From NCBI GenBank assembly GCA_002269645.1, contig NIVC01000700.1, forward strand, positions 124,001 to 188,000: a stretch of DNA of 64,000 nt, given 5' to 3'. Below the pieces are notes generated by a model. It was not told where the DNA came from. It saw only the letters and a list, made by a program, of their open reading frames with translations, and did no database searches. Each line of letters begins with the position of its first letter. Position 1 is the first letter of the stretch. This DNA comes from Macrostomum lignano. Its lineage: Eukaryota. Position numbers and translations under genes: made by a program. Positions 1,382 through 64,000 of this stretch are shown in pieces.

Positions 1382-4300
1382 TCAGACAGCCACAGCCGAT
1401 GTCGGCTCTCGACCTTCATCGGCCGCAGCCGAATCCTGGCCGTTCCGTCGCTTGCATTTCTTTGTGGCGCAGAGCAGGCGGCCCTCCAGCAGCATGTAGA
1501 ACAGGTCGAGCAATTCGCACAAGGTGAGCAGGCTGCAGCCGATGTAGAGGCCCAACAGGCCGCCCGTGTCAGCAAGAAAAGCAGTCCAAGAGTACGAGGC
1601 CGACAGCACAACTAGAGGTGACCGGGCGGAGGAGCCCCAGACGCTCACCCGCAGATGTGACTCGGCCACGTAGGAGCGAAACAAACTCTCCAGGTGAGCC
1701 GAGTGACCGCCCGGTTGCAGCAGCTGGCGGGCCATCCGAGTGAGCCGCCATCGGGCTGGCGCCTCCGCCTCCGAGACTGCCTGATGCTCCTTGGCGAAGT
1801 AACCAATTGTGGAGCTGCCAACGCCAGGCCAGCGGCCGAACGAGAACACGGCCCGGTAGGAACGGGAATGGCAGGGGATTCGTTTGGAGCAGCTGGCGCT
1901 GGCCTGCTTATCAATCTGGGTGGTCTCCTCCAGACTGGCCGAGCGAAGTCTGGTCAGCACCGCGCTGGACGCCTCGGACAGGTTGAGGCACCTCGGCCAG
2001 GCCCGGTGCTCCCAGAACAGGGGATAACCGGACGGCTGGCAGCCGAACGCGTTAATAAACAATTCGTGCTTGTGACGGTGAAAACAGGTCAGGTGGTTGT
2101 AGTGAAACTCCAGCGGTCTTTCTGCAAGCCAATGGGTTGAAAATAAAAGTCAGATGTGATTAAAGTAAGCTGAATAATAACTGTGCCTGAAATTTAACCT
2201 TAAGAAAATGCCCCAGCGAGAGAGCCATGATACTCACCTGTCAGGTGATCCCGGTAAATAACATCCGGTGAGCCAGGCACGCATTCGTTTCCGTGAAGCT
2301 CCTCGCTGGCGGCGCTCTCCTCCATCTCCAGCGCTACCGAGTAACCGTTGCCAGGAGCAACCAGGAAGCTGCTGCTTGGCGCCACCATCGGATATTCACC
2401 CGGCGGTACCAGCATCATGGTGTAGCCGGAGATCTGAAGCCAATAATAGTTAAGTCTTTTATGAGAGAAAAAGAAACCGAACAAGCAAATTTGTTTTGTT
2501 CTGAGTTTTCCAGACTTTATGATCTCTGAACAAAAAAAATAGAATACGCTGAGTCAGTTCACAAAGACATCAACGTCACAGGGTGCGTCTCAGAGCCTGG
2601 GCGTGAACGTAGGCTACATAGTGCACTACTCCTCGCGCCGATGGCAGCAACGCCTCCTGCACAGTCTGTGGGCGGTACATGCGGTACTCGGCGAGGATGA
2701 TATGGCTGGACGGATTAGGCCAGCGCGGTCATACGCTCGTACAGTGCCGGGTTGGAAACCCTCTCGTCGCCGATCTCGCAGGCACCGTCCAGGTCTAATC
2801 ATTGGATGGTAGTAGATGGTAGGATCTCGGACTGCATGGCTGGCCTCACAGAACGAAAAGCAGCCCAGGCAAGCCCGCGGCGACGCCGCAAATCCCGCGG
2901 ACGTCGGGAACCATCTCTTAAAATGTTGTGGCTATGAAATCTTTTAAACGTACGTAGCTTGGTTGTCTTTGCGGTTTTGTTGATTGTGAGGTTGTGTACA
3001 ATGTTCTACTGATCCTAGAACTTTTGCCCCATGTACATGGACATGTATAGATTAGCAGACGCTTGTTATCAGCCCTTCCGCTCTCCCCATGTAACTAGGT
3101 GTAAAGTTTTTCAGAGCAAAACGTGTGAGATACAAGTAAAAAGTCTGAAAACCTCTGAGTAATCGACGGCTCAATTTACGAGCATAGTGAATTTTCGTGT
3201 TGTTTTCCAACATTATGGTCATCTCATATTAAGCAATAAGCAGCAGCTCCTGACGGTAAGCATTGCAACCTGCCTTTAAGTCCTCGGCCCCTCCAGCATG
3301 CTGCCATTCAGTGAACTCCAGCGACTCGTTACCGAGTCTGTCTTTGATCGGCCGAATCGACTCTCCGGTATAGTTGAAGTCTGAGAAGTACGGATCTGTA
3401 GACAGCCACACGTGCAGGACGCTGCCGCTTGTCTGCATGTGCTGGCGCAGCTTTGGTGTGAGCACCGGCCGAAAGCAGATCAGGTTAGTCGGGTGGTAAA
3501 ACTCCTCCATAGCCACCTGGTCGACCCGGAAGTGACTCACCAGCTCGCTGCGCAGCACCGACTGCAGCTTGCGCAGCGCAAGGTACCTGGTTGGGGTCGA
3601 TCAAATCACATTATGCAATTTGCGACATTCACAAGAAGAATCGCATACTGAAATACAGCAGTCATTATAATAATATTTAAATAAAACTCGAGCGCATGTG
3701 TCCACAGGTGAGGTCCTGGCTCAACGGTTGATAACTTTTGACACGAGTAAGAAATTAAAAACCGACCTTGGCCTGACTGTTGGGCACACATGTAGAAGAT
3801 CATAGCCACCTCTGGATGATAGTAAGAATTGTTCCATTTCATGTTTACTCACCCCTGCTCAGCCCATGCACCTTGCGCAAGTACAACTTCGCAGGCAAGT
3901 CCCTGCTCTATGAAGGCCTATCTCTACAAAGCCTATCCCATACCATGCACCCACCTGATCGCCATGCCAACAGGCAGCGAGTTCTGAATAGCGGAGGCTT
4001 TGAGCAGCACATCGCTGTCATTTGTCTGGCTGTCGTACAGACTGCTCAACCGAGCCACTTCGTCATTCACAGCTTTCGCTTCCGCACTACTCAACGAGAA
4101 CGGATAACTGCCCGAGTACTGACTGTTCGGACAAAAGTACAGCTCGGGAAACACGAAAGACACGCGGCCAGCCTCGTAGGTCGAAGTCAGCTCCACACTC
4201 TGCAGCTTCTTCACGAGGCCCCTGGCCGTGTTAAGAAATAGACCAAGAAACACGGCGAACAGGATTGCCCACATCGCTTTGAGCGGGCCAGCCTTGGTAA

Positions 4301-4385: not shown

Positions 4386-6258
4386 GTCGCTAGGTTTGCA
4401 CGATGAAGATGAAGCGATCTACGAGTATTCTGAAGAGGATGCGTTACAGAATCCCGCTTATATAGCCCCAGCATTCACCGGTCATCTGATTGGCCAATGT
4501 GCCGGTTCAGAAGATATTGAAAATTTACAAGTCTGAATTTGTTACATTAGGCATGCTGTTGTATCTCAAGGAGTGATCATTCCACGCAAAGGGGATTCTT
4601 TGCTGGACTGACCTAGGGAAAAATTTACATTTAACATACATGCATGTATGTAGATATATGCTTTATAAAGCTGGCAGTCTCTCCAACCATGGTGTACGTA
4701 GGAAATTGTGTTGTGCGCACCACACTTAGAAGCGCAAACATTTGGGGGCCCTGGCTATTGGTGGGTACTCTGTTTCTGAAAAACAGGTATGTTTCTGAAT
4801 AGGTATGCAAATGTCATCTGCAAGAGGTGATTAAAATGGAGCGATCTTTGTCATTCATCAAGCTTGCTGGCCTCGATTCGATTTCGCGCGTTTATGAAGT
4901 TTGTACTTTCTGTAGGGCCGCGGTTCTTTGGCGGGCGATGGGGGTGCACGGCCCTCTGATTTTCGACTAAACACCCACATTAACATGCGGCCATATTTTT
5001 AGGAATACTATTTAAGGATCTTTGTGACTTGTAATGATCAACGTCTAGAATAAAAATCTTTTTAAAAAACAAGCGACGACACGACTAACACAGCGGCTTG
5101 GGGAAAGACATTCGCTCTGTGGCATCTTTTAAACGTCCTTTCTGTTTAAGTATGGCCGAATTGATGGACGCTGCTGTGCCTATGCGATCACTTGCAATCA
5201 GCTGCGTCACATACGAGCTAAGAGCCAACGACTTTCATCCATTCTGCAGGTACACGGCATGGTTATACATGTAGGTAGATGCCTTCTTTCAGGTCATGTA
5301 GGTCGTAAACTGTGCATGCAGGATTATAATGCTTGAAGATACGAGCCTACCATAGCAGCAGTCAGAATTAATGTAGATCAATGCAATATTTATTTTCTTT
5401 TCAAAGAAACTAAAAAGAGTACTATCCAATATACTGCACCTGTGTAGCGATAAAAATTCCGTAGTTTCCAGTTCCAATCATGCGTCGCTGCCGACTTTTC
5501 TGGCCTCATAAATTTCCTCTGCGTAAGCCTAATTATCCGAAGTCGATCGCCAGATCTTGATAAAGAAGGCTGCCGTAAAATATTCGGCTTATATAGAAGC
5601 GGCGCATGAGACATGATCTACATGTAGACTTATAACCCGCGGCCAATGCATTTTCATGAGGAAATGCTAATCCGCTTTCTGATTATGCACTGCACTGTGC
5701 AGTAGTTGTTAACCAAGCATTTGGGAGGCAAACGTTTGTCTTAGATGCATCATTTGTACATATGCATGTAGATTAATTAGCGGAATTTTTTGCACTATAA
5801 AAGAAAAATAATGGCGGGAGCACGAGTTTTTTATGCCCTGCATGCTTTTTCGGTCAGGAGCTTCCCGGCCCAGTTTTCCCGACGAGTTTTTCCAGAGCCG
5901 GAGCTTTCCCGCAGGATTTTTCCCTGTTTTAGAGGGTCCTTTGTGCTTAAAATCATTGGTAGTGTGAAATGAAGTGATGAAAATCTAAGTGATAAAACAC
6001 CTGGTCTTCGTTTATCACTGCTATAATCTTCAAACCGAGACATCGGTTCGAATCTGCAGTGCTACATGTAGTCCGAGACTATAGCCATCTCACAGCACGC
6101 CGTGTTCCTCGCGCAACTAGACAAACATCCTCAGCTCTTCTCTACAAAAAACACGCTGAAGGCGTGACTGGCAGACCTTCCTGACCAACCCGCGACCCCA
6201 GCACCCAAGGCTACATGAATTTATATGGTATTCGGGCTCTTCTTTTATTAGCGACAAT

Positions 6259-7374: not shown

Positions 7375-10300
7375 ATGTACCCGCCCGAACTTCAGCGATT
7401 TGACTGCATTTCGACAAGTGCCGAGAAACCATTACAATGGGAGCAAAGGTCGACAAAATCTGCTTCGTCCATCATTTTCCCGAAAAGATTGCAGCTATCC
7501 GATGTCCCGGTTCAGCAGAGGAAAAAATCCTACATGGATTGCATCTACCGACAGCGCGTAACCATCAAGCGACTTCAAGACCAGATCGCCAAGGCAAAAG
7601 CAACAAAATTCAAAAGTGCGACAATGAGTCGAGTGATTCAGAGCAGCATCAAGCAGCAGTTTGTTGATTCCCGTGGAATGCGATGGTCAAAGAAAAGTAT
7701 TTCCGAATCTATCCAGCTGCACCACAAGAGCCCAGCTGCCTACCGAATGCTGCGCAACAAGTGGAATTTTCCACTTCCATCCGAGTCATCGCTGAAGCGG
7801 CGAACCCGGCAGTTCTTTTCATCCCCTGGTGTCTGCCAAAAAACGATCAAGCTGTTGCATGAAAAGCTTGCTAATGACCCCGAGCCACAGCGACTAGCAA
7901 CTCTCTGCTTGGATGGCATGAGTTTATCAGCCAGCATCCGCTACGACCATCATGGTGACCGAGTCGTAGGCTATGATGAACACTCTGCTGAGGACCTTGA
8001 GCAAAATCTTCAGAGACCCGTAAACGAAGCCGTTGTTGCTGTTCTCCGTGGAATCTGGAGCAACTGGAAGCAACCAATTGCATACTATCAAGTACATAGA
8101 ACCCTCGGTCAGCTTCGATTTAAGTCTGCGATAGACGAGTGCCTTCGCGCTGCCCATGAAGCTGGAGTTCGGGTTGTCGCACTGGTTGTTGACCAAGAAA
8201 CTACACAATGGGCCTACCTCAGCAAACTGGTGAGTTCAGTACTTTAATGATATAATCCCTTATAAATATTAAAGCATAGAGGAAATAATGCTCAAGTTTG
8301 GATATATTAAAAATTTATTTCGCACTAAAAATTATATTGCTATTGTTTCGAGATTTAAAACTTCAAAATAAAAAAATCAATGTTATTTGTGCCAGTAAAC
8401 GTTTTGATTACTTTAAGCCTTGCAACTTTTTATTTGTTTAGGTAAATCCTGCGGCTCCATTTCTAAACCATCCTGTGACACAAAAGCCCATATTTGTGAT
8501 TATCGATGTCCCGCACTGCCTAAAGAATGCGCGCAATGCCCTCATGAAGAACAACATCATTTTCGATGGAGACAAGCAAGCAAGATGGCAAGACCTAGTC
8601 GACTTCTACGAAAGGGACAGCAGCCGATCGCTTAGACTGGCGAGTCGGCTGAGCGATGCGCACTTCAACCTTCAATTGGGCCAGAAAATGAAGGTCTCCC
8701 TAGCCGCTCAGATCTTTAGTCACTCGGTTGCCAGCGGAATCAAGACACTAGTGCATCATCAAGAACTGCCTATCGATGCCTTGCAGACAGCAGATTTTGT
8801 GCAGAGAGTCAATGATGCATTCGACTTGTTGAATTCAACGCACATTTTTGACAAAGGATTTAAGCAGCCGATCACGCGAAATTCGCTTGCAGAGAAGATT
8901 GACGAGTTGCGCAGCGTCGAAGCCTTCATCAGAAGCTGGCAGTTCCTTCCTAGCAGCGGAAAGTCGCTAAAGGCGACTATGAAATTCAAAGAAGCATTGA
9001 TTCTGTCGACTTCTGCAATACGACAGCTCAGCACAGCGTTGATTCAAGATGAGCACTACGAGTTCGTGTGCACGCGAAGACTAACACAGGATCACGTTGA
9101 GGTGAGTTACCTTGATACTCGTACTTTAAATCAAACATTTTACAAATGTATAAATAGTGTAATCACAGGTGCAAAGAGCAATAGTACTTAGCTGAAATAT
9201 GTACTTCTAATATACCATATTGATGCACGCACAGAGTCAGATGACTCATCAGTCACAGAATCAGATGACTCAAGTCACTGAATCAAATTCAATGAGATGC
9301 CACTGCTCAAGGGGGAATCAATGAGGACTGACTGACTGACTGACTGACTGACTGACTGACTGACTGACTGACTGACTGACTGACTGACTGACTGACTGAC
9401 TGACTGACTGACTGACTGACTGACTGACTGACTGACTGACTGACTGACTGACTGACTGACTGACTGACTGACTGACTGACCTGACTGACTGACCTGACTG
9501 ACTGACTGACTGACTGACTGACTGACTGACTGACTGACTGACTGACTGACTGACTGACTGACTGACTGACTGACTGACTGACTGACTGACTGACTGACTG
9601 ACTGACTGACTGACTGACTGACTGACTGACTGACCTGACTGACTGACCTGACTGACTGACTGACTGACTGACTGACTGACTGACTGACTGACTGACTGAC
9701 TGACTGACTGACTGACTGACTGACTGACTGACTGACTGACTGACTGACTGACTATCTAAAGTTGTAAATTTATTTAAAGTAAAATGCATGTATAAACTTG
9801 AATTACAGAATCTGTTCTGCATCATCCGTGGCCGCAATGGCTTCAACGAAAAGCCTGAGATTGCAGCGTTTCTTGGGCACTGCGATCTGTAGCTGCCAGT
9901 GGCCTCTCCCAGCCAGATTCTGCGGCCAGAAACTGCGAAGACGACGGCTGTGTAGCTGCAGTCACAGCAGACTGTGCAGCTGTTGAACTCAGCACGACCA
10001 GCACGTCTGCCGCGAGTGATTCAAAGGCTGATGATCGGGGTGATGCGACTATTTCCAAAATATTGATACAACAAGAGCAGCCGGCTCATGATTCAATTCT
10101 AGAAGAAGCGACCGAGTATGTGGGCGGCTTTGTGCTCAATAAGAGTGGCGTCCTGGAATGCCAGAGCTGCAAGTTGGTTTTGACTGCTACGAATCCTACT
10201 GGAGTGCATCTACGGCATAAGACGCTGTCTCACGCGGTCTGTGGCCTAAAACTGCCTTCGCCAACTGCACTGCAAAGCTTTAACAAAATGGAAGCCATCT

Positions 10301-17549: not shown

Positions 17550-18505
17550 CTCCAATCCTACATCCCAGAATCCCAATCCTACATCCCAGAATCCCAATCC
17601 TACATCCCAGAATTCCGATCCTACATCCCGAAATCCCAATCCTACATCCCAGAATCCCAATCCTACATCCCAGAATCCCAATCCTACATCTCAGAATCCC
17701 AATCCTACATCCCAGAATCCTAATCCTGCATTCAAGAATCCCAATCCTACATCCCAGAATCCCAATCCTACATCCCAGAATCCCAATCCTACATCCCAGA
17801 ATTCCGATCCTACATCCCGAAATCCCAATCCTACATCCCAGAATCCCAATCCTACATCCCAGAATCCCAATCCTACATCTCAGAATCCCAATCCTACATC
17901 TCAGAATCCCAATCCTACATCCCAGAATCCTAATCCTGCATTCAAGAATCCCAATCCTACATCCCAGAATCCCAATCCTACATCTCAGAATCCCAATCCT
18001 ACATCCCAGAATCCCAATCCTACATCTCAGAATCCCAATCCTACATCCCAGAATCCCAATCCTACATCTCAGAATCCCAATCCTACATCCCAGAATCCCA
18101 ATCCTACATCTCAGAATCCCAATCCTACATCCCAGAATCCCAATCCTACATCCCAGAATCCTAATCCTGCATTCAAGAATCCCAATCCTACATCCCAGAA
18201 TCCCAATCCTACATCTCAGAATCCCAATCCTACATCCCAGAATCCCAATCCTACATCCCAGAATCCCAATCCTACATCTCAGAATCCCAATCCTACATCC
18301 CAGAATCCCAATCCTACATCCCAGAATCCTAATCCTGCATTCAAGAATCCCAATCCTACATCCCAGAATCCCAATCCTACATCTCAGAATCCCAATCCTA
18401 CATCCCAGAATCCCAATCCTACATCTCAGAATCCCAATCCTACATCCCAGAATCCCAATCCTACATCTCAGAATCCCAATCCTACATCCCAGAATTCCAA
18501 TCCTC
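17550..18505. repeat. 21-bp minisatellite (CCCAATCCTACATCCCAGAAT)
   Basis: Directly visible; it generates the spurious CRIGILG ORF. Confidence 0.95.
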
Positions 18506-18618
18506 CATTCCAAAAAACTATTTCTTATAGCTACAGATCCCAGTTCTCAAGCTGTGCCGCTCTGCATTTATAACTCAACACTCATCTCAGTGCCTAAACT
18601 GCGATTCTCCAGCTCGCA

Positions 18619-35117: not shown

Positions 35118-35308
35118 ATCGCTTCTCGGCCTTATTGGCTAAGATCAAAGTGTAGTTTCTGTTCTTTAGAGATAATTCCTCTAACGTAGGCCATTGGTCT
35201 ACTAAGTAATTAATCCGGTTTTTGATGAGTCGGGCCAGTGCTTCGTGTTCACACGACCTGGTCCACGCGTAGGCCTTGCGCTGCAGTACAGCAAGGATCT
35301 GCGCATCT
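35118..35308 (+). ncRNA. U2: U2 snRNA, full-length reconstituted variant copy
   Basis: Starts ATCGCTTCTCGGCCTTATTGGCTAAGATCAAAGTGTAGT. Stem IIa TTAGAG/CTCTAA, stem IIb GTAGGCC/GGTCTAC, Sm-like GGTTTTTG, stem III, and stem IV CCTTGC/GCAAGG with a TGCAGTAC loop. Confidence 0.93.
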
Positions 35309-35707
35309 AAAAAAAAAAAAATAATGAAAGCGGAGGCATGGCAGTATCAAGGAGTACTGTACATGTATATAGCCATGTACAGTGGTCCTTTGGGTGGTAG
35401 GAAGAACGTAGAATACCGACGTCAGATGCAAAACTGACGCGGTCGACCTCCCTGTGCCTTCGCCTGATCGCCCGCGGTATCCACGCGCCCTTCTCTCTCG
35501 TTGCTCTTTGCTTCCCCTTTGACTTTTGCTCCTGTTTTCACCCGTCTACATCATACATTTTACATTTTATGTATCTATTTATCATTTATTTCATCCTCCT
35601 TTACCTTTTTAATCATTTCGACTCACTTTTCTATCCTATCCTTTCGTTTTCGCTTTTCTTTTACTTCTACTCTCGTTTTTATCCCCAGATATCCTTTTCC
35701 TCTAAAA

Positions 35708-37029
35708 TCTTGGTTCCAAGTCCGCCACGCCACCCGCGAAGTGCTCCACGCGACCGGGCTGCGCTTCACCATCAGCAACGACTGGACGGCCAGCCTGGAG
35801 TGGCGCGACCCGCTGTCCGGAACTATCCAGCGCTGTGACAGAGCGGCAGCAATCACCCGGAGGCTTCACCAGGTGGTCAGGGCAGCGCACACGGCGGCCT
35901 GGCGCGGGTGCCACTCCCAAGGCCGATTCGCCACGACTGCCACGCACATCGGCAGCCACACCTGGCTGTTCAGCAGCACCGGCATGCGCGCCTGCGACTG
36001 GCGCTTCATCCACCGAGCGCGGCTCAACCTGGTGCCCACCAACGCACTCCGGAGACTGGCCGACCCGACATCCGACCCGCGATGCCGCCGCTGCGGAGCC
36101 GGCGTCGAGACGCTCGGCCACGTCATCAACAGCTGCCCGGTGCACGCGGCCAGGTGGAGAGACCGCCACGACGGCATCGTCAACGCCGTCGCCACCGCCA
36201 TCAGCGAGGCCCGCCCAAACGCGACCATCACCACCGACCAGGAGGTCCTTCCCGGCTCTGATCTGCGACCTGACATCAGCATCATGGATCCAGACAGAGG
36301 CCGCCGCCTCCTGATCGAAGTCAAGTCGCCGTTCGAGGTCGGGCCGGCCACGTTCCCACGCAAGCACCGAGCCGTATGCCAGAAGTACGCCGGCATCACG
36401 CAGCAGCTCAGCGCAGAGGCGCCAACGGCCCTGGCCACGTTCTGCATCGGCTCGCTGGGTGCCTGGTCGCCCTTCAACAACGCCATCCTGCGCGCTGCAG
36501 GCCTGCGCGAGCGCGACATCCGGCACCTCCAACGACGACTGGCGCTGCACTGCATCCACTGGAGCCGCAACACGTGGGTGGAGCACTGCACCGGCGCACC
36601 TCAAATCCACTGATTTTGTGCCGAACTCTGCCAAACTCTGCTCATCTCAGCCCACCCTGTTACCTTTACTTTTACCTGTTTTATTTATCTTCCACTCTGC
36701 ATTTTTGTTTTACTTTGTTTTTCTTTAATATTTTACTTTTTACTGTCTCGAAGTTCATGCACTCTGTAAGCATTTTTCGCTGTGATTCCGCCTCTCGCGC
36801 CCATCCCCGCCGCCACCCCGTCTCCTGCGCCTTCACTTTTTCCCACTGTTTTAATTGCATTTACTTCAATGTTTTACTGTTTTACGCATCCTGCGAACCC
36901 GTTTTTAGCTACTTTCAGTAGCATCATCGGCTCTTGGCCAAATATTTCTGCTTATATCGCTTATTGTGTTTAATACTTAAATATATTGCCCGACCGTCGG
37001 ATACTCGGCCGACGGGCAGGGCCTTTCGC
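35708..37029 (+). mobile_element. 5'-truncated RLE-type non-LTR retrotransposon inserted in U2 (Utopia-like); ORF remnant to the stop at 36613 plus a 416-nt 3'UTR
   Basis: Contains WRFIHRARLN, CCHC knuckle CRRCGAGVETLGHVINSC, RHDGIV, and RLE nuclease RPDI...IEVKSPFE...KY. The 3' end abuts TCTGTTCTT of U2. There is no RT domain. Confidence 0.92.
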
Positions 37030-37181
37030 TCTGTTCTTTAGAGATTAATTCCTCTAACGTAGGCCATTGGTCTACTAAGTAATTAATCCGGTTTTTGATG
37101 AGTCGGGCCAGTGCTTCGTGTTCACACGACCTGGTCCACGCGTAGGCCTTGCGCTGCAGTACAGCAAGGATCTGCGCATCT
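37030..37181 (+). pseudogene. U2: 3' part of the interrupted U2 snRNA gene
   Basis: Near-identical to 35158-35308 and starts at TCTGTTCTT. Confidence 0.92.
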
Positions 37182-37631
37182 AAGAAATCTAAAATAATGA
37201 AAGCGGAGGCATGGCAGTATCAAGGAGTACTGTACATGTATATAGCCATGTACAGTGGTCCTTTGGGTGGTAGGAAGAACGTAGAATACCGACGTCAGAT
37301 GCAAAACTGACGCGGTCGACCTCCCTGTGCCTTCGCCTGATCGCCCGCGGTATCCACGCGCCCTTCTCTCTCGTTGCTCTTTGCTTCCCCTTTGACTTTT
37401 GCTCCTGTTTTCACCCGTCTACATCATACATTTTACATTTTATGTATCTATTTATCATTTATTTCATCCTCCTTTACCTTTTTAATCATTTCGACTCACT
37501 TTTCTATCCTATCCTTTCGTTTTCGCTTTTCTTTTACTTCTACTCTCGTTTTTATCCCGAGATATCCTTTTCCTCTAAAATCTTTTTGAAATGCGCTCCC
37601 GCCTTCTTTTTTGCTTCAAATTGCTTTAACA

Positions 37632-37784
37632 TTCGCCGCCCCCGTGCGACACCGTGACGTCGCCGACTTCCTGAATGGCGCGACGCTACCACCAAGCGGC
37701 GGGACATCCAGCTGGTGGTTTCAAGTGCGCCACGCCGTCCGAGAGGTCCTGCAGCCGCTTGACCTGAAGGGTTTTTTGCCTTAG
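37632..37784 (+). mobile_element. Short remnant of a second, diverged Utopia-like ORF
   Basis: Reads DVADFLNG...SSWWFQVRHAVREVL versus SWFQVRHATREVL at 35709. The differences are mostly synonymous. Confidence 0.78.

Positions 37785-41479: not shown

Positions 41480-64000
<22,521 letters not shown>

What the first reader, a model, noticed from the sequence alone, without database searches (positions are those of the whole stretch)
37632..37784. Second Utopia-like family remnant homologous to the exact truncation point of the first
Seen: 47 bp after the end of the duplicated block lies an ORF fragment FAAPVRHRDVADFLNGATLPPSGGTSSWWFQVRHAVREVL. Its TGGTTTCAAGTGCGCCACGCCGTCCGAGAGGTCCTG aligns codon for codon with the first bases of the insert, TGGTTCCAAGTCCGCCACGCCACCCGCGAAGTGCTC, with six synonymous changes and one replacement. 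A random truncation is unlikely to land there. Inference: either the 5' junction was guided by pairing of the nascent cDNA with this older remnant, or both copies are versions of a recurrent U2-linker-Utopia unit made by two families. Either way this U2 locus was visited repeatedly.
Basis: partly seen in the sequence, partly recalled or inferred. Interest (0 to 1): 0.75.

Follow-up and report, generated by a model that had tools for sequence, protein, structure and literature searches.

The report
Old Utopia stump beside U2 insertion
A 150-base leftover of a U2-gene-targeting jumping gene (Utopia) really does sit next to a newer, truncated Utopia copy from a different lineage. So this U2 gene was hit at least twice, which is known behaviour for the family, and nothing shows that the old piece guided the new insertion.

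Summary
Window 37632-37784 encodes a 50-aa fragment (B). A profile built only from foreign Utopia-type proteins finds B as the single significant six-frame hit in the window (E 1.8e-5).

- **Overlap.** B overlaps the first 12 codons of the 5'-truncated insert A (35711-37029). There are 8 nt differences: 6 synonymous third-position changes and one replaced codon.
- **Family.** A ends exactly at the canonical Utopia site in U2 (…|TCTGTTCTT). It carries the CCHC zinc finger and restriction-like endonuclease. Its relatives sit at the same U2 position.
- **Duplication.** A is flanked by a 555-bp duplication (98.9%) of U2 nt 41-end plus 400 bp of downstream flank. This leaves a full-length U2 upstream.
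- **Best reading.** Two diverged Utopia lineages visited one U2 locus. A is a recent dead-on-arrival copy with a very long target duplication. B is an orphan stump.
- **cDNA-pairing idea not supported.** Every homology-guided route would keep 37585-37715 in the upstream copy, and that segment is absent.
- **Truncation point.** The match is a roughly 3-5% post hoc coincidence, and relatives show no clear truncation hot spot.

This is a new member of a known kind. The long duplication that regenerates U2 is the more interesting by-product.

The parts
35118..35311 (+). Full-length U2 snRNA gene upstream of the insert. It carries two deviations in the invariant 5' region: an extra A, and GUAGUU instead of GUAGUA.
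   Evidence: Rfam RF00004, 134.1 bits, model positions 1-192. nhmmer model positions 1-191.
35158..35711 (+). Upstream copy of the 555-bp duplication: U2 from TCTGTTCTT to its 3' end plus 400 bp of downstream flank. Base 35711 (T) is shared with the insert (1-nt microhomology).
   Evidence: 98.9% identical to 37030-37584.
35711..36613 (+). Insert A coding part: the C-terminal 300 codons of a Utopia-type protein (linker, CCHC zinc finger, PD-(D/E)xK restriction-like endonuclease), open to its stop. No reverse transcriptase, so it is 5'-truncated and non-autonomous.
   Evidence: Translation. Homologues up to 37% identity. Invariant DWRFIHRARL, C-x2-C..H..C, RHx, RPD and KY columns. The clade profile hits R2 proteins in PDB at E 3e-30.
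36614..37029 (+). Insert A 3' UTR, pyrimidine-rich, ending in a stable hairpin. Its last base abuts TCTGTTCTT of U2.
   Evidence: Sequence. Fold of the last 70 nt: -25.5 kcal/mol, z -3.35. Junction seen in the alignment.
37030..37184 (+). Disrupted U2 (lacks the first 40 nt, equal to canonical nt 1-38). It starts at the canonical Utopia/Keno target TCTGTTCTT.
   Evidence: Rfam 80.6 bits, with no true match to the 5' part. nhmmer model positions 40-191. Kojima & Jurka 2015 report U2 nt 39 as the 3' junction.
37030..37584 (+). Downstream copy of the 555-bp duplication.
37585..37631 (+). 47-bp pyrimidine-rich spacer between the duplication and remnant B. It is absent from the upstream copy.
37632..37784 (+). 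Remnant B: about 145 nt of the linker region of a second Utopia lineage (..DVADFLNG..SSWWFQVRHAVREVL..). Recognisable homology runs from about 37641 to 37775. No reverse transcriptase, endonuclease, 3' UTR or U2 fragment of its own follows.
   Evidence: Translation. Independent profile hit at E 1.8e-5. No further Utopia or U2 piece elsewhere in the window.
37716..37753 (+). The stretch of B that overlaps the first 38 nt of insert A.
   Evidence: 79% identity. Codon-by-codon pattern.

Best explanation
One U2 snRNA locus in a metazoan-like genome was hit at least twice by U2-targeting Utopia (NeSL-clade, restriction-like-endonuclease) non-LTR retrotransposons from two diverged lineages.

**Insert A (35711-37029) is the recent event.**
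- Shown: its 3' end lies exactly at the canonical U2 site.
- Shown: only the last 1.3 kb of the element is present.
- Shown: it is bracketed by two 98.9%-identical copies of U2 nt 41-end plus 400 bp of flank.
- Inferred: target-primed reverse transcription started at the canonical nick in U2, just 5' of TCTGTTCTT.
- Inferred: copying stopped early.
- Inferred: the cDNA end was joined with 1 nt of microhomology to a top-strand break about 555 bp downstream of the nick.
- Inferred: filling in the stagger produced a 555-bp target-site duplication. Because it includes the whole 3' part of U2, it leaves a full-length U2 upstream and a 5'-deleted U2 downstream.

**Remnant B (37632-37784) is an orphan stump.**
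- It comes from an earlier visit by another lineage.
- The rest of that element was lost. How it was lost is not shown.

**The truncation-point match is most likely coincidence.** B happens to span the codon at which A is truncated, and B played no part in forming A's junction.
For: **Family and target**
- The 3' junction is ...CCTTTCGC|TCTGTTCTT. This is the site reported for Utopia.
- In 16 of the 26 related loci that carry U2, a U2 fragment starts at model nt 39 or 40.
- A has the CCHC and RLE motifs and matches the R2 zinc-finger/RLE region in PDB at E 3e-30.
- The closest relative, L001, ends in the same way in U2.

**Duplication**
- 555 bp at 98.9% identity. Its left edge is the target site and its right edge is the insert's 5' end.
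- There is no other U2 piece or unit-like repeat in the 35 kb upstream or 26 kb downstream.

**Recent event**
- A's 300 codons are open, and the two duplication copies differ at only 6 of 555 aligned columns.

**B is real and from another lineage**
- Profile hit at E 1.8e-5.
- 6 synonymous changes against 1 replacement; P about 1e-4 under random substitution.

**Precedents**
- Several Utopia families share U2 arrays, and intact U2 genes lie upstream of copies in Phytophthora.
- Relatives show 5' junctions 24-550 bp past the preceding U2 fragment (L002, L050, L065) and a 31-bp U2 duplication (L007).
- A long target duplication is reported for the RLE element R9 in rotifers (reference listed in PMC13580325).
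Against: - A 555-bp target duplication would be far longer than any reported for Utopia (0-20 bp). No empty site is available to prove it was made by the insertion.
- B lacks everything expected of a previous insertion: a 3' UTR and its own disrupted U2.
- Two near-coincidences remain unexplained. The left edges of A and B are 84 nt apart in element coordinates. Their junctions are 47 bp apart in the target.
- The source organism's other U2 loci could not be examined.
Confidence: 0.55

Rival explanations
1. Pre-existing tandem pair of U2 units plus deletion. The locus already held two near-identical units (U2 - linker - 47 bp - B - ...). A inserted at the canonical site of the second unit, and its truncated 5' end was joined in the spacer of the first unit. 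This deleted the rest of that spacer, including a first copy of B, and nt 1-40 of the second U2. Under this reading no target duplication was created.
For: U2 genes of relatives' hosts are tandemly arrayed, with a period of about 1.1-1.3 kb in the tick locus L003 and about 0.8 kb in L001. 5'-truncated copies that sit a short distance after a preceding U2 fragment occur in such arrays (L002, L050, L065). Kojima & Jurka favour a deletion of the U2 5' fragment in Phytophthora.
Against: There are only two U2 pieces in 64 kb. Nothing upstream of 35118 resembles anything downstream of 37785, so there is no sign of a repeat unit beyond the exact 555 bp. This reading needs an extra prior event and 99% identity between paralogous spacers.
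Confidence: 0.2
2. Mobile composite. 'U2 - linker - A' is transcribed from the U2 promoter by read-through and retrotransposes as a unit. The U2 sequence at the cDNA end anneals to nt 1-38 of a new U2 target. Each insertion then recreates a full-length U2 followed by linker and A.
For: It gives exactly the observed order of parts without a 555-bp stagger. The tandem unit of L009 has U2 nt 39-190 only 41 nt in front of a full-length 1481-codon ORF. The four clustered changes in the A-run just after U2 (35312-35324 against 37185-37197) would fit one copy having passed through error-prone synthesis.
Against: The target's own flank would have to be 99% identical to the transduced linker for 400 bp, so the target would have to be the same locus or a very recent paralogue. 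No second copy of the composite was found in the window or in any collection searched. B's composite would differ by 131 bp in the junction but by 21% in the element, which a shared origin does not explain.
Confidence: 0.13
3. Homology-guided 5' junction. The nascent A cDNA paired with remnant B, and this fixed where A is truncated.
For: B covers the truncation codon, and the two share 38 nt at 79%.
Against: Pairing and extension, a template switch or a crossover at the homologous point would all leave 37585-37715 between the linker and A in the upstream copy, and it is absent. Identity jumps from about 99% left of the junction to 79% right of it, so A is not a deletion derivative of the B arrangement. 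The longest exact run is 9 nt. The actual junction shows 1 nt of microhomology with the linker, not with B.
Confidence: 0.05
4. Truncation or processing hot spot. Elements of this clade tend to end at or near the W-x3-R-x-A-x-R-x-L motif, because of an RNA 5' end, an RNA structure or a reverse-transcriptase stop. A and B would then be truncated 84 nt apart for a common reason.
For: A and B left edges are 28 codons apart. One unrelated old truncated copy (L029/L030, a single shared event) starts one codon after the same Trp.
Against: In about 50 evaluable copies from 75 metagenome loci, the 5' extents are spread from fewer than 50 to more than 1200 residues upstream of the anchor motif, with no clear excess there. 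Several apparent ends near that point continue upstream on inspection (L056, L058, L061). tblastn ends tend to fall at the edges of conserved blocks, which inflates any apparent cluster.
Confidence: 0.07

Closest known systems
Utopia (U2 snRNA gene-targeting NeSL-clade non-LTR retrotransposons; Kojima & Jurka 2015, PMC4640811)
   Same: - 3' end joined to U2 at TCTGTTCTT (canonical nt 39).
- C-terminal CCHC zinc finger plus PD-(D/E)xK endonuclease.
- 5'-truncated copies, and more than one lineage at one U2 locus.
- As in Phytophthora, a full-length U2 rather than a nt 1-38 stub lies upstream of the copy.
   Different: - The host looks metazoan, where the published arthropod and reptile families give 0 or 20-bp duplications.
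- Here the flanking duplication is 555 bp and reaches 400 bp beyond the U2 gene.
- The best protein match to any sequence in the databases is only 37%.
- The RT needed for phylogenetic placement is missing from both pieces.
R2 / R9 (28S rDNA-specific RLE non-LTR retrotransposons)
   Same: - Same C-terminal zinc-finger/RLE architecture (PDB R2 proteins, E 3e-30).
- Target-primed reverse transcription, frequent 5' truncation and variable 5' junctions.
- R9 of rotifers is reported to make an exceptionally long target duplication (title cited in PMC13580325).
   Different: The target is U2, not 28S. No Myb or N-terminal domains can be assessed here.
Keno (APE-type non-LTR retrotransposon that targets the same U2 site)
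   Same: Identical 3' flanking U2 sequence.
   Different: [quoted passage not shown] Insert A has a restriction-like endonuclease, so it is not Keno.

Membership tests
Utopia (insert A) | 3' end of the element abuts U2 snRNA gene sequence starting at canonical nt 39 (TCTGTTCTT) | tested here: met
   The junction is ...CCTTTCGC|TCTGTTCTTTAGAG at 37029|37030. The U2 model match starts at position 40 of this U2, which has one extra A upstream.
Utopia (insert A) | C-terminal zinc finger plus PD..D/ExK restriction-like endonuclease | tested here: met
   CRRCGAGVETLGHVINSC, RHD, RPD, IEVK and KY are aligned with invariant columns of homologues. The profile matches the R2 zinc-finger/RLE region in PDB at E 3e-30.
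Utopia (insert A) | Reverse transcriptase that groups with Utopia/NeSL in an RT phylogeny | not testable with these tools
   A is 5'-truncated and has no RT. Indirect support only: relatives with the same C-terminal region carry RVT_1 and end in U2.
Utopia (remnant B) | Protein homology to Utopia-clade elements | tested here: met
   A profile of 12 foreign homologues gives E 1.8e-5, the only significant six-frame hit in 64 kb.
Utopia (remnant B) | Own 3' junction in U2 | tested here: not met
   No 3' UTR, endonuclease region or third U2 fragment lies downstream of B anywhere in the window. B is linked to U2 only by lying 447 bp after the U2 3' end.
Keno | Apurinic/apyrimidinic-like endonuclease | tested here: not met
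   A encodes an RLE at its C-terminus.
R2 | Insertion in the 28S rRNA gene | tested here: not met
   The flanks are U2. No rRNA was found by Rfam in the window.
Target-site duplication made at insertion | Direct repeat whose inner edges are exactly the two ends of the insert, with a single copy at the empty site | tested here: inconclusive
   The edges fit exactly. No empty site was available, because the organism's DNA was not found in any collection.

The most novel reading that the evidence does not exclude
Utopia integration can use a top-strand break hundreds of bases downstream of its nick in U2. The insertion then duplicates the whole 3' part of the gene and regenerates a full-length U2 upstream. 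Repeated cycles at the same regenerated gene would stack elements (newest upstream, older stumps such as B downstream). This would explain the 'intact U2 upstream of every copy' puzzle that Kojima & Jurka left open for Phytophthora, and how a parasite of a low-copy essential gene persists. The near-coincidence of the A and B junctions (47 bp apart in the target, 84 nt apart in the element) would then reflect preferred break and stop positions rather than chance.
Probability: 0.2. Interest if true: 0.55.

Novelty: new member of a known kind. Interest (0 to 1): 0.3.

Why it matters
**Small on its own.** This is one more U2 locus carrying pieces of two Utopia lineages, in a host lineage that is poorly represented in databases.

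**What could matter is the geometry around it.**
- The locus is clean and not part of an array.
- A Utopia copy is bracketed by a 555-bp duplication that restores a full-length U2.
- If the duplication was made at insertion, it shows how an element that targets an essential, low-copy gene can insert without destroying its target.
- It would also show how arrays of 'Utopia - disrupted U2' units can grow.
- Kojima & Jurka 2015 raised this as an open point.

**Caveat.** The restored U2 has two changes in its invariant 5' region, so whether it is functional is unknown.

Tried and rejected
1. **Other copies in the same genome.**
   - A protein search with A gave nothing above 37% identity.
   - An exact 31-nt pattern from this U2's 3' end gave 0 hits in metagenome contigs.
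   - A Piezo exon used to identify the organism gave no hit at E <= 1e-10.
2. **More Utopia or U2 pieces in the window.** tblastn with 28 homologues, blastn of the block, flanks and 3' UTR against the window, and nhmmer with a U2 profile found nothing beyond the parts listed.
3. **Linker as an old Utopia 3' UTR.** Both are pyrimidine-rich, but no sequence similarity was found at word size 7 and E <= 1. The idea was dropped as untestable.
4. **The 131-bp difference (37585-37715) as an intron removed from a composite RNA.** There are no GT..AG boundaries.
5. **A as a deletion derivative of the B arrangement.** Rejected, because identity is about 99% left of the junction and 79% right of it.
6. 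**Truncation hot spot across relatives.** A survey of 75 loci showed a broad spread. Only one shared old event (L029/L030) is near the same codon.
7. **Twin priming.** Rejected, because B is in the same orientation as A.
8. **The repeat finder on L003.** The output was swamped by an 8-bp microsatellite. It was replaced by blastn with one U2 unit.

Full report
**1. What is at the coordinates**

The surrounding anatomy on the + strand is as follows.
- A full-length U2 snRNA gene lies at 35118-35311 (Rfam RF00004, 134 bits, model 1-192).
- A 399-bp 'linker' follows at 35312-35710.
- An open frame starts at 35711 with WFQVRHATREVL and runs 300 codons to a stop at 36611-36613.
- A 416-nt pyrimidine-rich 3' UTR at 36614-37029 ends in a stable hairpin (z -3.35).
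- A U2 fragment then begins at TCTGTTCTT (37030). It is followed by the same linker.

The two copies of 'U2 nt 41-end plus linker' are 35158-35711 and 37030-37584.
- They are 98.9% identical over 555 columns.
- They differ by one indel, one substitution, and a cluster of four changes in the A-run just after the U2 3' end.
- The fragment starts 47 bp after the second copy.

**2. Is the fragment real, and is the overlap real**

DNA evidence:
- 37716-37753 matches 35711-35748 at 79% (30 of 38 nt).
Six are third-position synonymous changes and two fall in one codon (Thr/Val).
- With 8 random substitutions, the chance of at most one amino-acid change is about 1e-4.

Protein evidence:
- The fragment finds the insert start at E 8e-5 within the window.
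- As an independent test, I built a profile from the equivalent region of 12 homologues from other organisms, with neither window sequence in it. I searched all 1703 six-frame pieces of the window.
- The piece 37590-37781 is the only significant hit (E 1.8e-5; next best 0.23). The alignment is PVRHRDVADFLNGAT..SSWWFQVRHAVREV.
- The fragment therefore carries about 25 residues of genuine element sequence upstream of the point where the insert begins.

**3. What the two pieces are**

The insert's protein:
- It has 28 homologues at E <= 1e-3, the best at 37% identity.
- The alignment shows the invariant DWRFIHRARL, a C-x2-C..H..C zinc finger, RHx, RPD and KY columns.
- A profile of this alignment matches the zinc-finger/restriction-like-endonuclease end of R2 proteins in the PDB at E 3e-30.

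The relatives sit in U2.
- The best hit (L001) ends ...GCAAC|TCTGTTCTT in a U2 fragment.
- L002 is three Utopia-U2 fragment units in a row.
- The tick locus L003 is a U2 tandem array with four interrupted units.
- In 16 of the 26 related loci that carry U2, a U2 fragment starts at model nt 39 or 40.

This is the defining behaviour of Utopia (Kojima & Jurka 2015, PMC4640811).
- Insert A is therefore a 5'-truncated Utopia copy that lacks reverse transcriptase and was dead on arrival.
- Remnant B is a 145-nt piece of the linker region of a second Utopia lineage.
- No other Utopia or U2 piece exists in the 64 kb.
- The host looks metazoan: Piezo and ASC/ENaC exons, a P-element/THAP9-like transposase and very many minisatellites. 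It could not be identified.

**4. How the arrangement most likely arose**

The inner edges of the 555-bp repeat are exactly the two ends of the insert. The left edge is also exactly the Utopia nick site.

The simplest reading is as follows.
- Target-primed reverse transcription starts from the canonical nick.
- Copying stops early.
- The end is joined with 1 nt of microhomology (T at 35711) to a top-strand break 555 bp downstream.
- The stagger is filled in.

The result is a full-length U2 upstream and a 5'-deleted U2 downstream.

Kojima & Jurka saw just this outcome in Phytophthora: intact U2 genes, not nt 1-38 stubs, lie upstream of copies. They could not explain it, and noted that a duplication remained possible.

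5' junctions in relatives vary.

| Junction type | Loci |
|---|---|
| U2 nt 1 to about 30-43, then Utopia (canonical) | tick L003, L002 copy 1, L014, L055, L079 |
| U2 nt 1-69, then Utopia (31-bp duplication) | L007 |
| 5'-truncated copy 24-550 bp after the preceding U2 fragment | L002, L050, L065 |
| Tandem unit: U2 nt 39-190 only 41 nt before a 1481-codon ORF | L009 |

A long duplication has a precedent in the RLE element R9 (reference in PMC13580325).

Two rivals give the same product.
- One is a pre-existing pair of tandem U2 units with a deletion at insertion.
- The other is a composite 'U2-linker-A' RNA that moves as a unit.
- Against the first, nothing outside the exact 555 bp is repeated and no third U2 lies within 61 kb of flanks.
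- Against the second, the target's flank would have to match the transduced linker at 99%.
- Neither rival can be excluded without an empty site.

**5.

*Pairing of the cDNA with B.*
- I considered strand invasion with extension, a template switch to a read-through transcript, and a homeologous crossover with an empty allele.
- Each would put 37585-37715 (47 bp plus the 84 nt of B upstream of WFQ) between the linker and A.
- In the upstream copy the sequence goes directly from ...CTCTAAAATCT to TGGTTCCAAG.
- Identity is about 99% left of that point and 79% right of it, so A is not a deletion derivative of the B arrangement either.
- The longest exact run between A and B is 9 nt.
- This mechanism is not supported.

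*A recurrent U2-linker-Utopia unit made by two families.*
- The general pattern (U2 3' part, short spacer, truncated Utopia) does recur in relatives.
- Two lineages at one locus is established here.
- Whether it recurs in this genome cannot be tested.

**6. How surprising is the matching truncation point**

- B spans about 145 nt of an element that is about 5 kb long in relatives (L009 unit).
- A random 5' end falls inside it about 3% of the time. The figure is somewhat higher if short copies are favoured.
- It was noticed after the fact.
- If B's left edge is itself a 5' junction, then the two junctions are 47 bp apart in the target and 84 nt apart in the element. That is more striking, but it rests on the assumption.

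I looked for a hot spot in relatives.
- Among about 50 evaluable copies, the 5' extents range from fewer than 50 to more than 1200 residues upstream of the WRFIHRAR anchor, with no clear excess at 96-124.
- Three apparent ends there continue upstream on inspection.
- One old truncated copy does start one codon after the same Trp. It is shared by L029 and L030 with a common upstream flank, so it counts as one event.
- This is not enough to claim a hot spot and not enough to exclude one.

**7. Verdict**

- The finding is real, and its weakest claim ('this U2 locus was visited repeatedly') holds.
- That behaviour is already described for Utopia.
- The homology-guided junction is not supported.
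- The by-product worth keeping is the 555-bp duplication that regenerates a full-length U2 at a locus that is not part of an array.
- Novelty: new member of a known kind. Interest: 0.3.

Noticed in passing
window 35143-35160: The 'intact' U2 deviates twice from the otherwise invariant 5' region. It reads AUCAAAGUGUAGUUUCUG instead of AUCAAGUGUAGUAUCUG: an extra A, and GUAGUU instead of the branch-point-pairing GUAGUA. The changed base is the one immediately 5' of the Utopia nick site. It could be a scar of junction repair, a lineage-specific variant or a pseudogene.
   Followed up: partly
window 35312-35324 vs 37185-37197: Four of the six differences between the two duplication copies are clustered. 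The upstream copy has A13 where the downstream copy has AAGAAATCTAAAA. This looks like one complex event (slippage or error-prone fill-in) rather than independent point mutations.
   Followed up: no
window 35349-35390 (and 37222-37263): A 42-nt imperfect palindrome (GTACTGTACATGTATATAGCCATGTACAGTGG...) lies about 40 bp downstream of the U2 3' end, in both copies.
   Followed up: no
window 37004-37029: The last 26 nt of insert A (CTCGGCCGACGGGCAGGGCCTTTCGC) were aligned by Rfam to the 5' stem-loop of the U2 model and share CTCGGCC with U2 nt 8-14. They are part of a stable terminal hairpin. Possible mimicry of the lost U2 5' end, or chance.
   Followed up: partly
L001 1233-1300 and 2062-2089: In the closest relative's contig, the U2 fragment after the element starts with a 33-bp tandem duplication of U2 nt 39-71. 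The next U2 unit, about 825 bp downstream, is cut after nt 28 and continues into unrelated sequence, perhaps the 5' end of another element.
   Followed up: no
L009 1-5284: The contig ends are identical (1-48 = 5237-5284), which implies a tandem unit of 5236 bp. The unit consists of U2 nt 39-190, 41 nt, a 1481-codon intact ORF and a 3' UTR. It appears to be an active-looking Utopia amplified as 'U2 fragment + element' units.
   Followed up: partly
L029 1-330 and L030 1-330: Two contigs share a truncated Utopia copy whose homology starts one codon after the same Trp at which insert A starts. Both are preceded by a shared non-Utopia flank, and the two are about 76% identical.
   Followed up: partly
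L012, L016, L019, L020, L026, L050, L054 (U2 hits): In several relatives the U2 profile match after the element begins at model position 17-34 rather than 39. This suggests either a different insertion point or U2-like sequence at the element's 3' end.
   Followed up: no
window 7375-9191: Two adjacent ORFs match the P-element/THAP9-like transposase domains TNP-like_RNaseH_N and TNP-like_GBD (E 1e-27 to 1e-28).
   Followed up: no
window 54940-61153 and 1382-2062(-): Piezo channel exons (Piezo_TM25-28, E 4e-28) and an ASC/ENaC channel exon are present. The Piezo exon had no hit at E <= 1e-10 in the 5.8-billion-protein collection, so the host lineage is poorly sampled.
   Followed up: partly
window, many sites (e.g. 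49951-54795, 43946-45188, 17552-18512): Minisatellite density is exceptional: about 25 arrays with periods of 18-45 bp. One is a 4.8-kb array of a 33-bp unit (147 copies, 95% matches). They create long spurious ORFs on both strands.
   Followed up: no
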